Assembly (NCBI GenBank): GCA_964247055.1
Contig: OZ176057.1
Span: 2,914,001-2,978,000, forward strand
Length of the DNA: 64,000 bases
Source of the DNA: Paragordius varius
Lineage: Eukaryota; Animalia; Nematomorpha
Direction of reading: 5' to 3'
The position numbers and the translations under genes are program-made. Every line of letters begins with the position of its first letter. Positions within the stretch are counted from its first letter, which is position 1. Shown piece after piece: positions 1,858-47,609 of the stretch. Under the pieces are notes generated by a model, which saw nothing but the letters and a program-made list of their open reading frames with translations, was not told where the DNA came from and did no database searches.

Positions 1858-4046
1858 CTTACAACAATTTGATGTGAAATCCTTAAATCTAATATCAATG
1901 CAAATCTCCTGTTGTGTGGTATAAACCCGTACAAAAATTTAAAAAAAATTACAATATTTTGTTAATATGATCGGTGAAAAAATCGCTTGAAAGTATACCT
2001 TAAAAACAAATATAATACATTAATTATTCCCAAATATTTATCATACCTATATACAGAGTTATAAAAATGAAATTTAATATTAATTTATAAAATTAATTGA
2101 GAATTATTTGAAAGGTTTGTGAGTGTTTCACTCTTTTATCAAACTGTATATAATAATCCTTGTTGTCATCCGAGAATAATTTTTTGTGTAAAATAAACCT
2201 AGCAAACATTAATTTTAAAGAAAGACAATTATGTTAGGAATTTTTTTTTGAAATCAATTGATTTTAGATATATATAAATATTATAAGATTTTGTAAAAGA
2301 TCAAAAAGGTTATGTAGGGTTAATATTTCAATAACAGAAATTTATACGATAAAAATATACGGACAATTTTTTTTCTAAAATACAACCATACTATGTAAAT
2401 CTCGATTATAACTCGCTGTTTAGAATTGCAAAATATGAATTAGAGATGTATATTGGTAACATAATCAATTATTTATTATGATTGTAATTAAATAATTTAT
2501 TTGGGAAAAATTAAGAAAATTTTGGTTGTCTTTTGAAAAAAAATATTTGCCTATATATTTTTATGTTTTGTCCGTATAATTTTAATTTTACTCTAAATCA
2601 CTAATTATACCCGACATTTGCACAATATAAGGTTAAAAAAATAAAATCACACAAGTTATAATTTTTTATTCACATAATGTACGAAAAAGGGTTGTCTGCA
2701 AATATTTTTGTAAAATTTTTTGTAAAAAATGCAAAAAATTAAATATCCAACTAACGATTGCAAATTAAAAAAATGTTTTAATATCTTATTGGACTTGATC
2801 AATTTTTAACACTTCTGATCTTTTATGTATTGGTGTAGTTTATTTCCCAGTGTTAAATTTAGTAAATAAACTACTTAAAAAATATTTTAGGTTATTTATC
2901 AAATATTGTATTAGTGTATAAGCTGAAAAACTTACATTTTTTAGAGCTTTGTGGCTTCTACAGTTAAAAATTGAAACAGCTCCTAACCCTGAAACTAACA
3001 GCTTTTTATCAATAAATATATCAAGTTTCTGGGATTAAAATTCAATTCAAAAGCTGTTTAAAGTTATTATTTCATTTTCTAACCATATAAATTTACTGTG
3101 GCATTAGCGACATAAATATTAAGGAAAAAGTATTAGAGTATATAGTGAAGTTAGTTTATTGCAATCTTACATTTTTAAAAAGAAGATTTTTTGAATGTGG
3201 CTTAAAGGCGAAAGAAGGCAAATTTAATTTCCGCTAATACCCTAAAACTTTTTAAGATATTTACTGTTAAATCGTTCTGGGATATAAAACTATCCCAAAA
3301 GGTCATGGAGTATTAATATCAACTATCAAAAAATATATTGTCTGAAAAATTCAAGCCAACTCATTTTTTCCCATGATTTTACTATGCGAAAAAAATTTGG
3401 ATTTTACTACGGCTATTCATATATTTTATTTATAAATACTTAATTAAATTAGGACATAATATTTAACAGATTTTGGAGCTAAAATTTTTATAGTTTTTCT
3501 TTGATTTTTTTATGACATAAATATATTTTACATTTACTATATTTAGATCGAAATCGGCGAAGAAATGGTATAAAATAAATATTAAATTTAATTGACTCAT
3601 CATTGTAGAGGCAATTCATTCAATATAATTTCAATATTAAAAAGAAAGCATCTCAAAACCGCAATGGATATTGAAAAAAATTTTACTGCCAAAATTTTGG
3701 ATCAGCAATCGTTTTTTGAAAAAACATTAAAATTGATTTTAAAATCTTGGTTATTTAATTTTAACAATTTAATTTTATGATATTGTTTTTTATATAATCC
3801 AAATTAAATAAGAAAATTAAAAAAAATGGCTTAAAGCCAACCCGTTTAAATAAACAATGGAACTGGAATTAAAACATTTTTTCGCAAAATATGGAAACGC
3901 GGAATCCAAAAATAAAAAATACTAAAACTGTAATCCGACAAATAAAATAAATTCCAGATATATATATATATATATATATTCAATCCCATTTATTTGTTTA
4001 AACATGTGTGTCTTTTTATTTGATAGATGATGATGATAAGGAGGAT

Positions 4047-7000
4047 ATGGGATTGAAGTTTCTCATGACAGTGTTGCATTTTTTGAGTAATATATTACGA
4101 AACATTTATCATTATACCCGATTAAATTTTTTGGCGTCATGTAAAAAAATGAGAATTATCTAAAAATTGTCAGTGGGGCTTTCAAATAAAATTCTTCACA
4201 GACTCCAATTATTTTGAAATTTTTGGGGTTTTTGTATTTTATTGGCCCTAAAATATTTTGACACATTATTTGTAAAAGGTTTGTGGGTCCTGTGGTTTAC
4301 TTACAGGGCATACCTCGAAACCAATCAATAAAGAAGGAATTTTAAGTTTATTTCTGTTTTAGTGTTTGAATTATTTGATCTATAAAAAAAATTAAGGTGT
4401 AAAAACAATATTTTTTGTTGTCCTATTGTAAATAGGGGCCTATTACACCAATTTCATAAGTTATTTAAAAAATCTTATCTGATCATGTAAACTAAATTTA
4501 AGGCGTACAACTAAATAATGGATATAATTTAGACAAAGGCAGCACACGGCCATCAAAATGGCTACCCGTGCGAAATCTTATCCATTACTATCAAAACTAT
4601 GCTCACAAAGTTTTAGCCGAATTCGTGTTTCTTAAACATTTTAACAAATAAGGTCTATAAAATTGACAAGAATTAGATCAAGTTGTCATATTCTGTTAGC
4701 ATTTTACAAAGTTATTGTAACTAATAAAATTATCTTAAATGCTTATATATTTTTATGTGTGGAATATGATATATAGCGGCATGCAATGTCATTTATGTTG
4801 GACACCCCTATTTTATTTACATGTCTTTATATATTTTTATTTTTCTTCCTTTTATATTAGCAATGTTAAATCACCAAAGCCAACCAAGTCCTGGAACAGG
4901 AGGTATGATGTTATTCATTATAGTTTTAATTGTTAAATTTTTATTTAATGTGCCTGATATCTACTTTTTTACGGATCAATATAATTTTCAATCGTATCAG
5001 GTGTTTTGTTTTGCTGTTTAATATTCACCATTTTTTCCATAACAATATGGTCCATCCTTTTATACCACATGGCCCAATCAAAAACCATATTGCACAAATA
5101 TCAAAACTGGACCCAGGACCCCAAAAACCGGTTTTTGGTTTTTCATGAAACTGTTGTTCCATGATAAATAACGGAACCGAAACAATTTTTAAGTTTAAGA
5201 GCCGTTTTAGAACAGGTACCACTTTATTTATAACCGGTTTTAGAACCGATAAAAATGAAAGAAACGAAATCAGTTAGACTTTGAAAATCGTTTTGTACCC
5301 GGTTTCAAATTTAAACTTGGGTTCCACTAAGCACTGATAAATTTATATATTTGGATATTTTTCAAAGCAATTATTTGAAATCATGTTAACTAACCAAGTC
5401 TTTTTCAAACAAAATTGTTTTTTATATACAATCATTTTCTTTTTTAATTATTTTAGTTTTTCGTGTTATAAGCTATTTCATTTTTTCGAATTTATAGTAA
5501 TTTTAAATAATTAAATTTTACGAGAAAAATGTTTAGATACAGTTATAATATCAACGTTTCCATTCATTACTTGGCAACTCAAAACAATTTTAATTTAAAT
5601 ATTATAGTTATAAAAATGTTGTTTTTCCAAATTATATTTTTTAAATTATATAAAAAATTATTTTTTAAGTTTTTTGGAAAAAATATGTGACTATTGATCT
5701 GACTAGAGGAGATAAACTAGTAGTTAACATTCGGCCCTCTAAGACTTTTGTGCGTGAAAGTTTTGGAATCGAATAATTTGTAAAAACATGCGCATATAAT
5801 CTTAGTAAAATTGATAATTTAAAGACATTTTTTTCCAAATTACCAAATAGCAAGAACTAGAAAACATTATTACATTCACTTAATATTTTGCAATCTTATG
5901 TTCAAAATCTGATAAATTTTATAAAAATGCCCATATATATATATATATATATATATATTACCAACTGTTTGAGCTAAGTTGGACATCCCTGACATAAACT
6001 ATTGCACTATAGTTCCTTCATCAAATTAGATTGGATAGTTGCCTAAAACTTATATTAAATTAAATTAAAATAAATCAAATAAAAATCCGAAATCAAACAA
6101 GCATATTAATAATTATCCAATTATTACATTGATAAAAAATAAAAATATCCTAAAGATTGATAATATTTTATGGATTACCTAAAAATTAACAATTATATAT
6201 CGTTTAATGCGTTAATTCTGCTATTAATAAATATATAATTTAAAATTAATTTTTACAAGCCATGGTCGTAAAATAATTTATTTAATCCTAAACACAATAT
6301 GACTAATAATTACTTCACCAATCTTAATTAATATGTTATCGAAATTTGAAAAAAAAATTCACAAAATTTGTTTAAAAAATATAATAAAAGGTCAGAAATA
6401 TTAATTTTTACAAATATTTAGTATATATGTCACATCTTGGAGGGCTGAATGTCGCCTAAAGAGGGATTTTAAAGTACCAGTTTAATGATTTGCATTTTAA
6501 ATGTTTGATATACCATTTACAAATCAAATTCACCCTTAAAAAATTCTTCAATCTTGAACAATTCAAACACACTTTTGAACGATTCAGATTCACCCTCAAA
6601 TAATATATATATATATATATATATATATGTTTAAGATTATAATTTACCCATATTTTTATATATTTTATATTTTTATATTTATAATATGGGAATCATAAGA
6701 ATCCTTTTCTGTATATATTTTTAGGTGTCAATCCTCACAGTGGTTTAGGTGGACATGGCGGCGTCTTTGATATTTTTTCAAGCCGTATATTATCTTATTA
6801 TTTAATTATTAATAGTTTTTATTTTAACAACAATTTATATATTATCTTGTATTATATTACAGTTTTCGGCATGGGTAAGAAAGAAATTTTATATGATATT
6901 TATGTCTTATGATGCAAAAATTTACCAAATAGTACTAAAACACATAATAAGTAATGTGATTAAGTTTAATCAATATTTCAACGAAAATTGCATTATCCTT

Positions 7001-39500: not shown

Positions 39501-39872
39501 AATATTTTAATGATAAAGTCTTTTTATACCGCTTCCACCATGCTTGAAATACAACAAAACTTGTTCAACCAAAATTATGCTATCACAAATTTTCATTTTA
39601 ACGTTTAGACTTTTTATTGCGCAAAATCTGCAGTTTGCGTTTGGTTGAAGATATCATCACATCGAGTCAAATTTGAGACTTTCGAAGCCGAATCTAAAAT
39701 ATATAGTTTTTACAAAAGTATATTTTTAGTTGTCATATAGTTTTTAAGAAATTTAGTGATATTTTTAGATGAGGTCTCAGTAAAAAAAACTTGGAGCAAA
39801 TTGTATAATTTTGTCATTGTTCAATATGGAGCAATTATCATAAAATTAACAATTTACATTACTTGTACGGCC

Positions 39873-40157
39873 TGATATAAAAAGGATATATATATTTATT
39901 TAGTATAACAACAAAACTGAATAATATATGATGATCTGCGTGTCACAATGATTCCTTATATATATTATGAAATTTGGTTATTGCATTCACAAGGATATAG
40001 TTGTCTGATTTAAACGTTGTAAAAGATAATAAGTATAAATAAAATAATTTGCATTCACAACCAAGGTAATATATATTTTTAACGTAACAAGGACAAAAGT
40101 GTATTATGCGCTAAAAAAGAGAAGGATAATTTGCGTATGATAATAACCCTTTTAACA
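39873..40157 (-). repeat. Gypsy LTR 1 (outer 3' LTR)
   Basis: 285 bp, TG...CA. PPT AAGGAAGAAGG adjacent at ~40160-40170. Confidence 0.9.
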
Positions 40158-41803
40158 TACCTTCTTCCTTAAGCTTGATATCGGTCGGTTGGCTTTCGGG
40201 ATCGAATCGGGTACCGGCGAGTCGTAGTAGGAGAAGTGTCACTTGTTTGCACGGGAGTATTCTCACTTGAAGGCGCACTTTCTGATTCCGGATTCTCCTC
40301 GATGTTTTCAGGGGTTTTTATTTCATGTTCCGTGGGATGTTTTCTGAGGTTTTTATCATTGTTGTTTAAGTTTGCGGATGATGAGTTAGGAATGCTGATT
40401 GATATTTCCGGGTTATCTAGATTTTTAGTCTTTTCCTCACTTCTCCCGTCTTCTCCTTCGGCCGACATATCCATGCGATTCTTTAATTGATCAGCATGTT
40501 TGCGGATAATTTTGCCATTGTCGTTGACATTGTACGATAACCATCCCGTTCTGTCGACGATTTGTCCCTCCCTCCAACCAGTACACAATTCATTCTTGAT
40601 ATATACTTTTTGTTCCTTTTCAAACTCCTGCGGAATGTCGGGAGTATCCATGAATTCGTTGGGTTTCGTTTTCATCCATGTAAATGGGCTTTGCATAGTT
40701 CTTTTTAAAAACAAATGCGCGGGGGTCTCCTTCGTGGAACTGTGATGCGTGTTTCGGTATGCCCATAAGATTTGGTTTAATCTTCGCATTGGGTCTGCTG
40801 AAAGTGGGGTTGACATTGAATAATGATTTTTTAGAGTGTAAATTACTCTCTCTACCAACCCATTTGTTCGGGGGTGGTAGGGAGCTGATGTTACGTGTTT
40901 TATATTAGAGGAAGCTAAAGTTCTCTCAAACTCCCCCGATTTAAAATAAGAGCCGTTATCAGTAACCACCACTTTTGGGTACCCATACCGGCATAAACAG
41001 GTTTCTAAAAAACTTTAGAATATTACCTGTATTCACAGAGCGTAACGTCTCTACCTCCACCCAGCGGGTGCAATGATCAATTAGTACCACCCAGTATAAA
41101 TTGTCAATGGGTCCGGCGATATCTAGGTGGAGCCGTTCCCATATGGTTGATTCAATTTTGCATGAAAATTATGTGAACCCAAAAATGATCTAAGAGTGGT
41201 TTTGTTGGTCGGGGTCGGGCACTCTTGGATGGCTTTAATTTTATAGAGGGTTTAATGCAATTTTTAGAAATAATATGACCAAGATATTCCACAAATGGTT
41301 GAAAAAGTTTTATCTTTGCGCAATTTTAATCCCATTGTCTCCAATTTGGTAAATACCTTTATTAGGTTGTCCTTGTGCTTTGTTTCGGTTTCGCCTGTCA
41401 CTATAACGTCATCTAAATAAACGGCGGTACCTGTGCAATCTTTTAATAATTCGTCCATTATTTGTTGAAAGAAACTTGAAGCGCAATTCAATTGGTCGGC
41501 CGAAGGAGAAGACGGGAGAAGTGAGTAAAAGACTAAAACTCTAGATAACCCGGAAATATCAATCAGCATTCCTAACTCATCATCCGCAAACTTAAACAAC
41601 AATGATAATAACCTCCTAAAACATCCCACGGAACATGAAATATGAACCCCTGAAAACATCGAGGAGAATCCGGAATCAGAAAGTGCGCCTTCAAGTGAGA
41701 TTACTCCCGTGCAAACAAGTCACACTTCTCCTACTACGACTCGCCGGTACCCGATTCGATCCCGAAAGCCACCCGACCGATATCAAGCTTAAGGAAGAAG
41801 GTA

Positions 41804-42085
41804 TGTTAAAAGGGTTATTATCATACGCAAATTATCCTTCTCTTTTTTAGTGCATAATACACTTTTGTCCTTGTTGCGTTAAAAATATATATTACCTTGG
41901 TTGTGAATGCAAATTATTTTATTTTTACTTATTATCTTTAACAACGTTTAAATCAGACAACTTTATCCTGGTGGATGCAATAACCAAATTTCATAATATA
42001 TATAAGGAATCATTGTCACACGCAGATCATCATATATTCAGTTTTGTTGTTATACTAAATAAATATATATATCCTTTTTATATCA
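41804..42085 (+). repeat. Gypsy LTR 2 (internal), preceded by PPT and followed by PBS
   Basis: 282 bp. PBS TGGCGCGGCCG at 42088, whose acceptor-end pattern resembles tRNA-Ser. Confidence 0.9.
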
Positions 42086-42106
42086 ACTGGCGCGGCCGTT
42101 CGAGGC

Positions 42107-45100
42107 TATGGAAAAAATTAATTTATCATGTTTTAATATGTTGAGTTTACAAATTATATTACATATATTAAACGCAATTTGGAGGTCAAGAATGTCGCTG
42201 CCACCCATGAAAATATGAAGGCATGTTTGTTGGCTTTCTGAGGAATCGAAAATAATAATAAAATTGAAAATTATTTCTATCCACAAGCAATAGACAACAT
42301 ACCATTCCCAGGTCTATTAAACGCCGGTATAAAAATCTTCTCCCCCTCAAGGAATATATTTTCGTCGCGTTTTGATTTAATTAAAATGAAGAGGGGGAGA
42401 ATGGAAACGTTCACAGAATTCCTGTTAAGAGTTAAACAAATGGCCATCCACTGCCGGTTCTCGTCAAACATTGACGAGCGCATCAGAGATGTATTCATCG
42501 CGGGGTTAGATGAGCAAGCAGTGGAGATGGAGCTATTTACACGGTTCCCGGAGGCTTTAGAAAACGGGGCTCCCGTTTCTCTAAACACTGTGGTAAATAT
42601 TGCTTTATCACATGAGAAGGCACGAAATGTACTAACAAATGCAGAAGTGCTGTCCATCAATATTGATAATGATCATAATAGTAACAATAATAAATTTTCC
42701 TATTGAAATGATTTTTGATACGGGTGCCGATATTTCAATCATAAATTATAAAAACTGGTGCCGTCTAGGCAAACCACCACTAGATTTTCATATAATATTT
42801 TCATACATGCATACAATAATAATCGTATAAAAACATTAGGTAAATGCAAATTACAGGTTGAATTAGATAAAAGAACGCACATTCTAGAGTGCTTTATTAT
42901 AAACAACAATTTACCATCAATATTTGGAATGGACTGGATAAAACAATTTAATTTGAAATTACCGAGTCATGTAATAATAAATAACTTATCTTCATATGAT
43001 ATATATAACAAATTTAGCAAGTTATTTTCTGAGGGCCTTGGTTGCTGGAAAGGCGAACCGATTAGGGTGTTTTTAAGTAATAATAATTGTGGTAGAATTT
43101 TTCCAAATAGAAGGGTGCCACTATCGTTACAAAGCAAAGTGGAGGATGAGATAAATAGATTGGTAAAACTGGATATAATTGAGCCTGTTGATCCAAAAAA
43201 GACTAGAATCGTTTGGTGCCCTACTGTAAATATTTTAAAACCGAATAAAGAGCTTAGAAAATGCGCGGATTTTAAAATAAGTATAAATTCACACATAAAA
43301 CCGCCGCAATACATAATCCCAACCTTTGACTACCTCATCTCAAAAAATTCCTTCGGCAAATCTTTCTCGACACTAGATTTGAAAGACGCCTATTTTCTAA
43401 TTCCAGTAGACCCAGATAGTCAGCAGTTACTAACAATTTCTACACATAAGGGGTTTTATAAGTATAAACGATTGCCTTTTTGCGCTCCAAGTTTCTTTCA
43501 ACAAATAATGGACGAGTTATTAAAAGATTGCACAGGTACCGCCGTTTATTTAGAGGACATTATAGTGACAGGCGAAACCGAGACAAAGCACAAGGACAAC
43601 CTAATAAAGGTATTTACCAAATTGGAGACAATGGGATTAAAATTGCGCAAAGATAAAATAAAACTTTTTCAACCATCTGTGGAATATCTTGGTCATATTA
43701 TTTCTTAAAATTGCATTAAACCATACCCAAATAAAATTAAAGCCATCCAATAGTGCCCGACCCCGACCAACAAAACCACTCTTAGATCATTTTTGGGTTT
43801 ACTTAATTTTCATGCAAAATTCATCCCTTCCCTAAGCATTTTAATGGGAGAACTACATAAATTAGCAGGTAACAAACAAAAATTGGACGCTAACGCATTC
43901 GATTTTCAAAAAAGCTAAAGACTTGATCTGCCAGAGTAGTTCCTTGCATCCGTATAATCCCAAACTACCTATAGTCTTGGATACCGACGCGTCAATGTCA
44001 GGATACGGTGCTATTTTATTACATAGAACAACAGCGGTTAATCGCCCGATCGCCTACACGTCAAAAAATGCTCTCAAGCTGAAGAAAACTATTCAGTAAT
44101 TGAGCTAGAAGCAAAAGCTATCCTAATAGCGTTAGAGAAGTTTAAAACCTTTTTGTATGGCAGAAAATTTATAATAAAAACGGACCACAAACCTCTAGTG
44201 AAACTATTTGGGCCTCAAAGAGATCTAAATAAAATTAATAATTGTAAACTAGTACGCTGGATAACTAGAACATCGGTATTCGATTTTAACATAGAATATC
44301 ACCCTGGTACAGAAAACATAACTGACTGCCTATCGAGACTTCCCATTGAAAACCAGGAGCCGATGGCTTTTGAGAAAGACGATGAAAGTAGCAATGTTCA
44401 TTTGATTTGGTCCAACGAATTAAATTTAAATGGAGAAATTATCTATCAAGAGTCTATAAAGGATCCTACGATAGCAAAATTAAAAGTAGCCCTAAGGTCT
44501 AATAATTGGACGGACCCCCTGGTCAAGCCTTTCATCGCAATAAAAAATGAAATTGAGGATGCATACGGTCTATTATTTGTGGAAGATCGGGTAATAATCA
44601 TGAACAAAATTAAGCCAGAGATTTCAAGATACCTGCATAGTGGCCATCCGGGAATACAAGCCATGAAACTATTAAGCCGTGAAAAGGTTTATTGGCCCGG
44701 GTTGAGCCAAAATATCGAAAAATGGGTGCGTAGTTGCCAAAACTGCCAAAGGCTGCGTCCAAATGTACCCGAAAATCCCACCTATCAATGGAACGGGAAT
44801 ACAACCATATAAGAACGGCTCCACCTAGATATCGCCGGACCCATCGACAATTTATACTGGGTGGTGCTAATTGATCATTGCACCCGTTGGGTGGAGGTAG
44901 AGACGTTACGCTCTGTGAATACAGGTAATATTCTGAAGTTTTTAGAAATCTGTTTTTGCCAGTATTGGTACCCAAAAGTGGTGGTTACTGATAACGGCTC
45001 TTATTTTGAATCGGGGGAGTTTGAGAGAACTTTAGCTTCCTTTAATATAAAACACGTAACATCAGCTCCCTACCACCCCCGAACAAATGGGTTGGTAGAG

Positions 45101-45567
45101 AGAGTAATTTACACTCTAAAAAATCATTATTCAATGTCAACCCCACTTTCCGCAGACAACACGCATCACAGTTCCACGAAGGAGACCCCCGCGCATTTGT
45201 TTTTAAAAAGAACTATGCAAAGCCCATTTACATGGATGAAAACGAAACCCAACGAATTCATGGATACTCCCGACATTCCGCAGGAGTTTGAAAAGGGGCA
45301 AAAGGTATATATCAAGAATGAATTGTGTACTGGTTGGAGGGAGGGACAAATCGTCGACAGAACGGGATGGTTATCGTACAATGTCAACGACAATGGCAAA
45401 ATTATCCGCAAACATGCTAATCAATTAAAGAATCGCATGGATTGGTCGGCCGAAGGAGAAGACGGGAGAAGTGAGGAAAAGACTAAAAATCTAGATAACC
45501 CGGAAATATCAATCAGCATTCCTAACTCATCATCCGCAAACTTAAACACCAATGATAATAACCTCCG
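42107..45567 (+). pseudogene. Gypsy gag-pol, frameshifted (gag zinc knuckle deleted in this copy)
   Basis: ORFs 42386-42706, 42758-43708, 44153-44812 and 44861-45567 give gag, PR-RT, RH-INT(HHCC) and INT core in order. Confidence 0.85.
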
Positions 45568-46764
45568 ATCGGTTCGCCTTTCCAGCAACCAAGGAGAAAA
45601 TAACTTGTTAAATTTGTTATATATATCATATGAAGATAAGTTATTTATTATAACATGACTCGGTAATTTCAAATTAAATTGTTTTATCCAGTCCATTCCA
45701 AATATTGATGGTAAATTGTTGTTTATAATAAAGCACTCTAGAATGTGCGTTCTTTTATCTAATTCAACCTGTAATTTGCATTTACCTAATGTTTTTATAC
45801 GATTATTATTGTATGCATGTATGAAAATATTATGAAAATCTAGTGCTGGTTTGCCTAGACGGCACCAGTTTTTATAATTTATGATTAAAATATCGGCACC
45901 TGTATCAAAAATCATTTCAATAGGAAAATTATTTATTTTAGGAATGATTTGGGGTTTTTTGCCTTATTAAAATCGGAATATGCTTTAAACGTTACCTTAC
46001 AACATCGAGCAAAGTGGTTTGAACGATGGCATCTATAACATTCTTTTCCATAGGCAGAACGATGTCCCAACGTATAGTCCTCCCACATTTTGTGCAGGTT
46101 CGTCGGTTATTATTACTATTGTTGCTTTTTGATTGGTGAAGTGTGGCTATTTCATTTATTTCACCATTACTACTGTGGTTTTTATTATTGTTACTTTAAT
46201 TATCATTATCAATATTGATGGATAGCACTTCTGCATTTGTTAGTACATTTCGTGCCTTCTCATGTGATAAAGCAATATTTACCACAGTGTTTAGAGAAAA
46301 GGGAGCCTCGTTTTCTAAAGCCTCCGGGAACCGTGTAAATAGCTCCATCTCCACTGCTTGCTCATCTAACCCCGCGATGAATACATCTCTGATGTGCTCG
46401 TCAATGTTTGACGAGAACCGGCAGTGGATGGCCATTTGTTTAACTCTTAACAGAAATTCTGTGAACGTTTCCATTCTCCCCCTCTTCATTTCAATTAAAT
46501 CACGCGACGAAAATATATTCCTTGAAGGGGAGAAGATTTTTATACCGGCGTTTAATAGATCTGGGAAAGGTATGTTGTCTATTGCTTGTGGATAGAAATA
46601 ATTTTCAATTTTATTATGATTCCTCCGAAAGCCAACAAACATGCCTTCATATTTTCATCGGTGGCTGCGACATTCTTGACCTCCAAATTTCGTTTAATAT
46701 ATGTAATATAATTTGTAAACTCAACATTTGGATTTTTTCCATAGCCTCGAACGGCCGCGCCAGT

Positions 46765-47046
46765 TGATATAAAAAGGATATATATATTTATTTAGTATAA
46801 CAACAAAACTGAATATATGATGATCTGCGTGTGACAATGATTCCTTATATATATTATGAAATTTGGTTATTGCATTCACCAGGATAAAGTTGTCTGATTT
46901 AAACGTTGTTAAAGATAATAAGTAAAAATAAAATAATTTGCATTCACAACCAAGGTAATATATATTTTCAACGTAACAAGGACAAAAGTGTATTATACAC
47001 TAAAAAAGAGAAGGATAATTTGCGTATGATAATAACCCTTTTAACA
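46765..47046 (-). repeat. Gypsy LTR 3 (internal, inverted), with PPT and PBS
   Basis: 282 bp. PBS at 46745-46762; PPT and pol tail at 47047-47234. Confidence 0.9.
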
Positions 47047-47234
47047 TACCTTCTTTCTTAAGCTTGATATCGGTCGGGTGGCTTTCGGGATCGAATCGGG
47101 TACCGGCGAGTCGTAGTAGGAGAAGTGTCACTTGTTTGCACGGGAGTATTCTCACTTGAACGCGCTCTTTCTGATTCCGGATCCCCGATGTTTTCAGGGG
47201 TTTTTATTTCATGTTCCGTGGGATGTTTTCGGAG

Positions 47235-47486
47235 AGTATAACAACAAAACTGAATAATATATGATGATCTGCATGTCACAATGATTCCTTATATATATTA
47301 TGAAATTTGGTTATTGCATTCACAAGGATAAAGTTGCCTGATTTAAACGTTGTTAAAGATAATAAGTATAAATAAAATAATTTGCATTCACAACGAAGGT
47401 AATATATATTTTTAACGTAACAAGGACAAGTATTATGCACTAAAAAAGAGAAGGATAATTTGCGTATGATAATAACCCTTTTAACA
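47235..47486 (-). repeat. Gypsy LTR 4 (outer 5' LTR, inner ~30 bp and PBS missing)
   Basis: Shares diagnostic variants with LTR 1. Ends TTTTAACA|CGGCC. Confidence 0.85.
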
Positions 47487-47609
47487 CGGCCCAAAAGCGA
47501 AAGCAGTAGAAATCCAATTTTTTGCACTGTGTAATATATTTTCAACCAATCAAAGAAAGAGGCTTTTTCCAAAAAAAATATTTGATACAAAATATTTCTT
47601 GGATCAAAG

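What the first reader, a model, noticed from the sequence alone, without database searches (positions are those of the whole stretch)
39873..47486. One TSD, four LTRs, four internal junctions: a shattered Gypsy insertion
Seen: a single CGGCC duplication bounds 7.6 kb arranged as LTR1(-), INT tail(-), RT piece(-) | pol tail(+), PPT, LTR2(+), PBS, gag-pol(+) | protease-gag(-), PBS, LTR3(-), PPT, pol tail(-) | LTR4(-). Junctions lie at ~41155 (about 1 kb of RNase H region lost), ~41492, 45567/8 and 47234/5, with at most a few nt of microhomology or filler. The duplicated segments differ by a few percent and by private deletions; the gag zinc knuckle survives only in the minus copy at ~45935-46200. 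Inference: a multi-template patchwork made by RT template switching, recombination with retro-DNA, or replication-based break repair confined to one element.
Basis: partly seen in the sequence, partly recalled or inferred. Interest (0 to 1): 0.75.

Follow-up and report, generated by a model that had tools for sequence, protein, structure and literature searches.

The report
Scrambled gypsy retrotransposon insertion, miscopied
A 7.6-kb insertion of a gypsy-type jumping gene really is a patchwork of four pieces, one of them backwards, and it most likely arose as a copying accident before insertion, one of several such accidents in a sloppy but otherwise ordinary family.

Summary
CGGCC flanks 39873-47486. 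Inside lie three full LTRs and one truncated LTR of a 4.6-kb Ty3/gypsy family. There are three non-homologous junctions (41491, 45567/8, 47234/5; 0-1 nt overlap, no filler) and one 984-bp internal deletion (41153/4). All three junctions are unique in the 110-Mb genome.

New findings:
- The plus-strand piece B and the neighbouring minus-strand piece C meet at the same element position with a 5-6-nt overlap. Un-inverted, they form one tail-LTR-body-LTR-gag stretch.
- B and C share private changes that the outer pieces lack. All four pieces carry similar private divergence (~1.3%).
- Among about 40 insertions of this family, five have perfect 5-bp duplications but the U3 end of the LTR at both termini. 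Two of these are true palindromes. Another copy has a copied poly(A) tail inside. Such structures cannot arise after integration.

I therefore read the window element as an aberrant reverse-transcription product, made by several illegitimate template switches including two polarity switches, probably on two templates, and then integrated normally (about 0.55). Later break repair is not excluded (about 0.25).

The scan has met this family's miscopied copies before on other DNA of this genome (s1-285126). This is a known kind of accident and an extreme example of it, of moderate interest.

The parts
39868..39872 (.). Left copy of the 5-bp target-site duplication CGGCC
39873..40157 (-). LTR1, the complete 285-bp 3' LTR of the outer (minus-strand) frame. 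Its U5 end abuts the TSD.
40158..41153 (-). Piece A, part 1: PPT, 3' tail and integrase core (L003 coordinates 4322->3300)
41153..41154 (.). Junction J1: blunt internal deletion of 984 bp (L003 2316-3299; RNase H plus the integrase zinc-binding domain)
41154..41491 (-). Piece A, part 2: RT fragment (L003 2315->1969)
41491..41491 (.). Junction J2: minus-strand RT position 1969 joined to plus-strand position 3995, with 1 nt shared and no filler. Unique in the genome.
41491..41803 (+). Piece B, start: 3' tail and PPT (L003 3995->4322) running directly into LTR2
41804..42085 (+). LTR2, complete at 282 bp. It is sister to LTR3, sharing 3 substitutions and a 3-bp deletion.
42086..45568 (+). Piece B, body: PBS, gag (zinc-knuckle region deleted at about 42685-42694), protease, RT, RNase H, and integrase up to L003 position 4137
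45567..45568 (.). Junction J3: plus-strand position 4137 joined to minus-strand position 1544, with 0-1 nt shared. Unique in the genome.
45568..46764 (-). Piece C, body: protease start, gag with the zinc-knuckle DNA (about 45938-46180; reading frame broken), and PBS (L003 1544->306)
46765..47046 (-). LTR3, complete at 282 bp
47047..47234 (-). Piece C, start: PPT and tail (L003 4322->4132). Its first 5-6 nt, CTCCG(A), repeat the last 5-6 nt of piece B.
47234..47235 (.). Junction J4: tail position 4132 joined bluntly to LTR position 252 (L003 position 260). Unique in the genome.
47235..47486 (-). Piece D: LTR4, the first 252 of 282 nt. Its U3 end abuts the TSD.
47487..47491 (.). Right copy of the target-site duplication CGGCC

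Best explanation
The 7.6-kb block is one integrase-mediated insertion of an aberrant cDNA from a 4.6-kb Ty3/gypsy-type LTR retrotransposon.

During reverse transcription the growing DNA strand left its template four times without homology:
- a 984-bp skip;
- a switch to a template of opposite polarity at 1969|3995;
- a switch back at 4137|1544;
- a jump from 4132 into the LTR at position 260.

In between, it made two ordinary strand transfers. That is why pieces B and C each read tail-PPT-LTR-PBS-gag. The strand still ended with one proper U3 end and one proper U5 end, so integrase inserted it normally and made the CGGCC duplication.

Two templates, probably two co-packaged genomes, were used. 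The inner pieces (B, C) carry private variants that the outer pieces (A, D) lack.

Shown here: the anatomy, the unique blunt junctions, the TSD, the B/C kinship, the similar age of the pieces, and the fact that the same family has integrated cDNAs that were scrambled before integration.

Inferred: that this particular copy was also scrambled before integration, and the exact order of the switches.
For: 1. Proper U3 and U5 LTR ends and a perfect CGGCC TSD surround a scrambled interior.

2. Junctions J2-J4 join non-homologous positions, two of them on opposite strands, with 0-1 nt overlap. They occur nowhere else in the genome.

3. Both B and C contain tail-PPT-LTR-PBS-gag continuity. A single integrated element does not contain this, but legitimate strand transfers create it.

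4. Private substitutions per piece are alike: A 25/1747, B 15/1450, C 26/1667, D 2/252 (my chi-square on these counts gives p about 0.5). The outer LTR pair differs by 2.4% and B versus C by about 2.6%. All pieces therefore look as old as the insertion.

5. Family context:
- Five of about 40 insertions have U3 termini at both ends and perfect 5-bp TSDs: L009 GACAC, L013 ATAAG, L017 ACAAC, L020 GGTTG, L022 GCCGT.
- L009 and L017 are palindromes.
- L026 (TSD ATCAT) has an inverted interior and about 18-22 untemplated A directly after the LTR's poly(A) site.
- These structures cannot be made after integration.
- No U5-U5 pair was found for the young subfamily.

6. Breakpoints of different copies cluster: 11 inter-locus pairs lie within 10 nt against 4.4 expected, P about 0.008. 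This includes 4127-4137, seen in this window and in L020.

7. Integrated retroviral proviruses with inversions and asymmetric LTRs, ascribed to RT template switching, are documented (PMC9278108).
Against: 1. Nothing in the window element itself proves that scrambling preceded integration. Its ends are the normal U3/U5 pair.

2. B's end and C's start fall on the same element position with a 5-6-nt overlap. This fits an in-place inversion with one staggered DNA break very neatly. The RT model has to invoke a template discontinuity at about 4130, which has not been demonstrated.

3. The B/C-specific variants occur in no other genomic copy; all 25 copies of that gag stretch were scored. No source element for a second template is therefore visible. 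The shared variants could instead come from later in-situ duplication or from gene conversion between the inverted repeats.

4. The age comparison rests on small counts.
Confidence: 0.55

Rival explanations
1. Post-integration break repair. A normal minus-strand element (D...A) suffered a double-strand break and lost positions 261-1968. End joining then captured a 5.7-kb piece of retro-DNA from a second lineage (tail-LTR-body-LTR-gag, for example from a broken one-LTR circle, a concatemer or a tandem copy). The right-hand part, C, was inverted through a staggered break.
For: - The 5-6-nt overlap CTCCG(A) between B's end and C's start is what a staggered break filled in on both sides leaves at an inversion.
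- The blunt or 1-nt junctions fit end joining.
- B and C belong to a lineage distinct from A and D.
- The genome does make post-integration duplications. L005 is a 2-kb tandem duplication that includes flank sequence.
Against: - It needs several coincident events: a 1.7-kb loss, capture of a piece longer than one unit, and an inversion whose second breakpoint coincides with the capture junction.
- The pieces are as diverged as the outer LTRs, so it would have had to happen right after insertion.
- No tandem array or donor with the B/C variants exists in the assembly.
- Sister copies show that pre-integration scrambling is common in this family.
Confidence: 0.25
2. Stepwise in-situ evolution of a single element. 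Unequal LTR-LTR exchange made a tandem dimer or trimer. Inversions and deletions then shuffled the pieces: a|b|c|d|e|f became a|d|c-inverted|f, with b and e lost.
For: - Three-LTR tandem recombinants with one TSD are a known outcome of unequal exchange (own knowledge).
- The B/C shared variants occur nowhere else in the genome, which fits changes that arose at this locus before a later duplication.
Against: - In the trimer version, C's gag and A's RT/integrase belong to the same unit. A and B should then share the B/C lineage changes, but they share none over about 1150 bp, where roughly 5-7 would be expected.
- B and C are not younger than the outer LTR pair.
- It needs at least five breaks plus earlier recombination.
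- No tandem array of this family was seen among the 30 loci examined.
Confidence: 0.1
3. Assembly artefact, arising from chimeric or fold-back reads or from collapsed repeat copies.
For: No reads could be inspected, and repeats are where assemblers fail.
Against: - Collapse of repeat copies switches between copies at homologous positions. It does not create blunt joins between unrelated positions on opposite strands.
- Fold-back read artefacts give identical arms, whereas the arms here differ by 1.4-4.8% and by private deletions.
- The block sits about 3 Mb inside its contig with a perfect TSD.
- Analogous TSD-flanked structures occur at several other loci.
Confidence: 0.04

Closest known systems
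Defective retroviral proviruses with inversions, deletions and asymmetric LTRs made during reverse transcription (e.g. HIV-1 proviral landscapes, PMC9278108)
   Same: A rearranged cDNA integrated normally. The junctions are ascribed to RT leaving its template. Two co-packaged genomes serve as templates.
   Different: This is an invertebrate Ty3/gypsy retrotransposon fixed in the germ line. One copy has four junctions, including two polarity switches and four LTR copies. The family's rate of inverted products (at least 7 of about 40 insertions) is well above the 1-3% reported for HIV proviruses with inversions.
Autointegration products of LTR elements: deletion and inversion circles (Ty1; Arabidopsis SISYPHUS, PMC7197481)
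   Same: Inverted portions lie between LTRs. A short duplication of an internal site is expected, and the 5-6-nt B/C overlap is close to the family's 5-bp TSD length.
   Different: Autointegration joins LTR termini to the internal site and gives circles. Here no internal junction involves an LTR terminus (J4 lies 30 nt inside the LTR), and the product is linear and integrated.
Copy-back (snap-back) defective genomes of RNA viruses, and 5'-inverted L1 copies made by twin priming (own knowledge; the L1 categories are named in the abstract of PMC2912911, as listed)
   Same: The polymerase resumes on a strand of opposite polarity. This gives inverted segments and, in the sister copies L009 and L017, complementary termini that both carry the same end signal.
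   Different: The enzyme and the replication scheme differ. Here the duplicated end is the integrase-recognised U3 terminus, and the products are inserted with a 5-bp TSD.
Three-LTR tandem recombinants (LTR-body-LTR-body-LTR within one TSD) formed by unequal exchange or by multimeric cDNA (own knowledge)
   Same: More than two LTRs within a single TSD, and tail-LTR-PBS continuity.
   Different: One LTR and 4 kb of body are inverted. The junctions are non-homologous and do not lie in the LTRs.

Membership tests
Ty3/gypsy (Metaviridae-type) LTR retrotransposon | Direct LTRs ending TG...CA and a 5-bp target-site duplication | tested here: met
   The window LTR ends read TGTTAA...ATATCA and the TSD is CGGCC. 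Nine intact sister copies show perfect 5-bp TSDs.
Ty3/gypsy (Metaviridae-type) LTR retrotransposon | Domain order protease - RT - RNase H - integrase in pol | tested here: met
   Pfam scan of the 1341-aa ORF of L003: protease 286-386, RVT_1 493-637, RNase H 700-827, integrase 939-1121. Fragments of these domains are found in the window.
Ty3/gypsy (Metaviridae-type) LTR retrotransposon | PBS after the 5' LTR, a polypurine tract before the 3' LTR, and gag with zinc knuckles | tested here: met
   PBS-like ACTGGCGCGG follows each LTR, and AAGGAAGAAGG precedes each LTR. Two Cys-His knuckles lie in gag. Complementarity to a tRNA was not checked.
Aberrant reverse-transcription product integrated as such | Normal integrase-competent ends and a TSD around non-homologous internal junctions | tested here: met
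Aberrant reverse-transcription product integrated as such | A feature that cannot arise after integration, such as the same LTR end at both termini or a copied poly(A) tail | tested here: inconclusive
   Absent from the window copy, which has normal U3/U5 ends. Present in sister copies L009, L013, L017, L020, L022 (U3-U3 with TSD) and in L026 (A-run at the poly(A) site).
Aberrant reverse-transcription product integrated as such | All pieces are the same age as the insertion | tested here: met
   Private substitutions run about 0.8-1.6% per piece with no significant heterogeneity. LTR1-LTR4 differ by 2.4% and B-C by about 2.6%. Counts are small.
Nested insertion of a second element | The inner element is bounded by its own LTR termini and its own TSD | tested here: not met
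   None of J1-J4 lies at an LTR terminus. LTR2 and LTR3 are flanked by element tail and PBS, not by interrupted host-element sequence.
Autointegration inversion or deletion product | LTR termini joined to an internal site, with a 5-bp duplication of that site | tested here: not met
   A 5-6-nt duplication exists at L003 positions 4132-4137, but its partners are position 1544 and LTR position 252, not LTR termini.
Tandem LTR-element array by unequal exchange | All units and LTRs lie in one orientation, with junctions only within LTR homology | tested here: not met
   LTR2 and 4 kb of body are inverted, and the junctions are non-homologous.

The most novel reading that the evidence does not exclude
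This gypsy family may have an intrinsically copy-back-prone replication. One possible cause is a second plus-strand origin or discontinuity near element position 4130, together with other pause sites. A sizeable fraction of its cDNAs would then become palindromes, U3-U3 molecules and multi-template patchworks that integrase still inserts in a concerted way. That would make it a natural system for studying polarity switching by a retroelement RT and U3-U3 concerted integration in vivo. It would also offer a route from LTR elements to foldback or TIR-like repeats.
Probability: 0.2. Interest if true: 0.6.

Novelty: new member of a known kind. Interest (0 to 1): 0.4.

Why it matters
On its own this locus is a dead, decayed insertion with no evident function.

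Its value is as the most complex member of a set of germ-line-fixed, TSD-flanked miscopied insertions from one family. Together they show three things:
- The family's reverse transcriptase often resumes on strands of opposite polarity.
- Its integrase can insert molecules carrying two U3 ends.
- Such accidents can build long inverted repeats and multi-LTR blocks in a single step.

This matters for annotation, because LTR finders and LTR-divergence dating assume two direct LTRs per TSD. It also matters for understanding how inverted repeats and unstable palindromes are seeded in genomes.

Tried and rejected
- Same junctions elsewhere. I searched for them to see whether the patchwork had itself transposed. 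Only half-matches were found for J2, J3 and J4.
- A donor copy carrying the B/C-specific variants. None was found: all 25 genomic copies of that gag stretch were scored, and only B and C have the deletion. The best non-window relatives of C are 92-94% identical.
- An empty-site paralogue of the flanks. The immediate flanks are unique.
- Phylogenies of six element regions. They are star-like and resolve only the LTR2-LTR3 pair.
- RIP-like or otherwise biased mutation between copies. The spectrum is mixed.
- The shared CTCCGA at the end of B and the start of C as a lineage marker. It is the ancestral state; A's CTCAGA is A's private change.
- Models using nested insertion plus homologous inversion. 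They always leave LTR termini at the junctions, which is not what is seen.
- The three-LTR locus L005 as a cDNA multimer. It is a genomic tandem duplication that includes flank sequence.
- Literature searches found no report of TSD-flanked U3-U3 LTR palindromes. That is not proof of absence.
A natural copy, L003, served as the coordinate ruler.
Full report
**Setting.** The window is C8:2914001-2978000 of a 110.6-Mb, 44-contig, roughly 28% GC genome. Earlier notes of the scan call it an AT-rich animal. The finding spans 39873-47486.

**Check of the observation.**
- CGGCC lies immediately outside both ends, at 39868-72 and 47487-91.
- The repeated unit is a 282-285-bp LTR, TGTTAA...ATATCA. Three copies are complete: LTR1 39873-40157 (-), LTR2 41804-42085 (+) and LTR3 46765-47046 (-). 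LTR4, 47235-47486 (-), holds only the first 252 nt.
- Pfam finds RT, RNase H, integrase and protease fragments on the expected strands.

**The element family.**
- The genome holds about 40 insertions of this family.
- I used a natural full-length copy, L003:501-5127, as a coordinate ruler. It is 4627 bp with 305-bp LTRs and TSD TAAAA.
- Its 1341-aa ORF reads protease - RT - RNase H - integrase, with two Cys-His knuckles in gag. This is a metazoan Ty3/gypsy element; language-model neighbours are the usual 'K02A2.6-like' pol proteins.

**Anatomy in element coordinates.**
- Piece A (-): 39873-41153 = 4627->3300, and 41154-41491 = 2315->1969.
- Piece B (+): 41491-41803 = 3995->4322, then LTR2, then 42086-45568 = 306->4137. 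B has a private 246-250-bp deletion of the knuckle region and a 39-bp deletion.
- Piece C (-): 47234-47047 = 4132->4322, then LTR3, then 46764-45568 = 306->1544.
- Piece D (-): 47486-47235 = LTR 1->260.

**The junctions.** There is one plain deletion, J1, and three rearrangement junctions.
- J1 (41153/4) is blunt and removes 984 bp.
- J2 (41491) joins 1969(-) to 3995(+).
- J3 (45567/8) joins 4137(+) to 1544(-).
- J4 (47234/5) joins 4132 to LTR position 260.
J2 and J3 therefore share 1 nt and J4 is blunt.
- 120-nt probes across J2, J3 and J4 match in full only at this locus. The patchwork has therefore not transposed again.

- B ends at 4136/4137 and C begins at 4132. They overlap by CTCCG(A), which is the ancestral sequence there. 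If C is flipped, B and C form one continuous plus-strand stretch: tail-PPT-LTR2-full body-LTR3-PBS-gag-protease, 5.7 kb or about 1.24 units.
- Both B and C contain tail-PPT-LTR-PBS continuity. A single integrated element lacks this. It arises in tandem arrays, in one-LTR circles, or through the two legitimate strand transfers of reverse transcription.

**Kinship and age of the pieces.**
- LTR2 and LTR3 share three substitutions and a 3-bp deletion. These are absent from LTR1, from LTR4 and from 45 other LTRs. LTR1 and LTR4 each carry only private changes.
- In gag, B and C share further changes: 582 T>A, 1446 C>G, and overlapping 4-bp and 6-bp deletions at 1268-1273. None of the other 23 genomic copies of that stretch has them.
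- A and B share no such private change over about 1150 bp of RT and integrase.
- The inner pieces (B, C) therefore form one lineage and the outer pieces (A, D) another.
- Private substitutions per piece are similar: A 25/1747, B 15/1450, C 26/1667, D 2/252. LTR1-LTR4 divergence is 2.4%, B-C about 2.6%, and A-B about 3.2%.
- Within the resolution of these small counts, all pieces are as old as the insertion.
- Because no other copy carries the B/C variants, a second source element is not visible in the assembly. Later gene conversion between the inverted repeats, or a later in-situ duplication, remain alternative reasons for the B/C kinship.

**Family context, which decides my reading.** I mapped 30 other loci of the family on the ruler. 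Many are normal, with perfect 5-bp TSDs. Several are scrambled.
- L009 is LTR 1->315 joined to LTR 297->1. It is a perfect 299-nt palindrome with a 24-nt spacer and TSD GACAC.
- L017 is a 645-bp palindrome whose two arms carry the same U3(24)|internal junction. Its TSD is ACAAC.
- L013 has U3 1-12 | 310->4326 | inverted LTR 280->1, with TSD ATAAG.
- L020 has U3 1-18 | inverted 4127->1, with 7 nt of microhomology and TSD GGTTG.
- L022 has U3 1-~50 | (-)1697->1137 | (+)1690->2467, 3097->3857 | (-)LTR 66->3, with TSD GCCGT.
- In these five copies both termini are the U3 end of the LTR, yet the 5-bp duplication is perfect. An inversion after integration would have to break exactly at the element/flank boundary. 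These molecules were therefore scrambled before integrase inserted them.
- L026 (TSD ATCAT) keeps a U3 and a U5 end but has an inverted interior. It also has about 18-22 untemplated A directly after ...AAATAAATAAATATATCCTTT, that is, at the LTR's poly(A) site. This is a copied RNA tail and therefore an RNA-stage signature.
- L011, L016, L018 and L029 also hold inverted pieces but lack a complete end.
- No U5-U5 pair was found for the young subfamily, so the tally is 5:0, with some ascertainment bias.
- Breakpoints of different loci cluster: 11 inter-locus pairs lie within 10 nt against 4.4 expected, P about 0.008. Examples are 4127-4137 (window twice, L020) and 1891-1901 (L012, L019, L026). 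This suggests template-specific pause sites rather than random chromosomal breaks.
- Not every complex locus is of this kind. The three-LTR locus L005 is a genomic 2-kb tandem duplication that includes flank sequence.

**Most likely mechanism (about 0.55).** The window's plus strand can be read as a single nascent DNA trajectory:
1. LTR1 and the tail are copied.
2. A 984-bp skip occurs (J1).
3. At 1969 the strand switches to a template of opposite polarity at 3995 (J2).
4. It runs through PPT-LTR-PBS by a normal PBS transfer and on to 4137.
5. It switches polarity again to 1544 (J3).
6. It runs through PBS-LTR into the tail by a normal R transfer, as far as 4132.
7. It jumps to LTR position 260 (J4) and runs off at the U3 end.

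The equivalent plus-strand reading starts with an aborted strong-stop DNA. This is a feature shared with the sister copies, all of which begin with U3 1->x (x = 12, 18, 24, ~50, 285, 315). The product kept one U3 and one U5 end and was integrated normally. The inner pieces came from a second template. The steps marked 'normal transfer' and the order of events are inference.

**What speaks against it.** The 5-6-nt overlap of B's end and C's start is exactly what an in-place inversion with one staggered break leaves. The RT model has to postulate a strand discontinuity near 4130. L020's breakpoint at 4127 is the only independent hint of one.

The main rival is therefore a post-integration break in a normal element, repaired by capture of a 5.7-kb retro-DNA piece plus an inversion (about 0.25). 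Next come a stepwise in-situ history from a tandem multimer (about 0.1) and mis-assembly (about 0.04).
- The stepwise history is weakened because A shares none of the B/C changes, and because B and C are not younger than the outer LTRs.
- Mis-assembly is unlikely because the inverted arms differ by 1.4-4.8% and by private deletions, because the joins are non-homologous, and because the block has a perfect TSD about 3 Mb inside its contig.

**Comparison with what is known.**
- Integrated HIV-1 proviruses with inversions (1-3% of proviruses) and with asymmetric LTRs are described and attributed to template switching between two co-packaged genomes (PMC9278108).
- Autointegration gives inversion and deletion circles in Ty1 and in Arabidopsis SISYPHUS (PMC7197481). 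Those join LTR termini to the internal site, which is not the case here.
- Copy-back defective genomes of RNA viruses and 5'-inverted L1 copies are mechanistic analogues (own knowledge).
- I found no report of TSD-flanked U3-U3 LTR palindromes in the held literature. That is not proof of novelty.
- Within this scan, another agent already read the L020-type copy as a miscopied element 'from a sloppy but otherwise normal family' (s1-285126). I reached the same reading independently from the sequence. Other notes report gypsy elements of this genome with inverted LTRs or captured host mRNAs. I did not test these.

**Verdict.**
- The locus is a new and unusually complex member of a known kind of accident.
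- It has no evident function for the host.
- Interest is moderate and comes mainly from the family-wide pattern.

Noticed in passing
L009:5005-5624 (G000:C1:14936004-14936623): A perfect 299-nt LTR palindrome with a 24-nt spacer (LTR plus 10 nt of PBS, then the LTR backwards). U3 ends lie at both termini and the 5-bp TSD GACAC is perfect. It looks like an integrated snap-back strong-stop DNA of the young subfamily.
   Followed up: yes
L017:3753-4397; L013:1751-5883; L020:799-4900; L022:3770-5912: Four more insertions of the same family have U3 termini at both ends and perfect 5-bp TSDs (ACAAC, ATAAG, GGTTG, GCCGT). L017 is a 645-bp palindrome. L020 is a nearly full element capped by 18 nt of inverted U3, joined through 7 nt of microhomology.
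   Followed up: yes
L026:2436-5280 (G000:C1:1832435-1835279): A TSD-flanked copy (ATCAT) with an inverted interior. It carries about 18-22 untemplated A right after the LTR's AATAAA/poly(A) site, which is a copied RNA tail. This places the R/U5 border at about LTR position 285.
   Followed up: partly
L005:105-7105 (G000:C4:9929406-9936406): A three-LTR locus with one TSD (TGGAG). It is a post-integration 2-kb tandem duplication of flank plus the 5' part of the element, not a cDNA multimer.
   Followed up: yes
L003, L004, L006, L024, L025, L028 and others: A young subfamily is present, with identical or near-identical LTR pairs and long open reading frames. Its U5 is longer (about 20 nt) and it has a different version of region 4044-4107 than the older subfamily to which the window copy belongs. 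The family therefore seems to have been active recently.
   Followed up: partly
Element positions 1690-1697, 1891-1901, 2121-2122 and 4127-4137 (L003 coordinates), across loci: Breakpoints of independent rearranged or truncated copies fall within a few nt of each other (P about 0.01 by simulation). These are possible RT pause sites or strand-discontinuity sites.
   Followed up: partly
window 39669-39846: The left flank of the insertion holds a short dispersed repeat of about 100-180 bp, with at least 40 copies at 68-77% identity across the genome. It was not characterised.
   Followed up: no
L015:6858-8474: A distantly related second gypsy-type element (about 65% identity to the ruler) lies next to a 5'-truncated copy of the family.
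   Followed up: no
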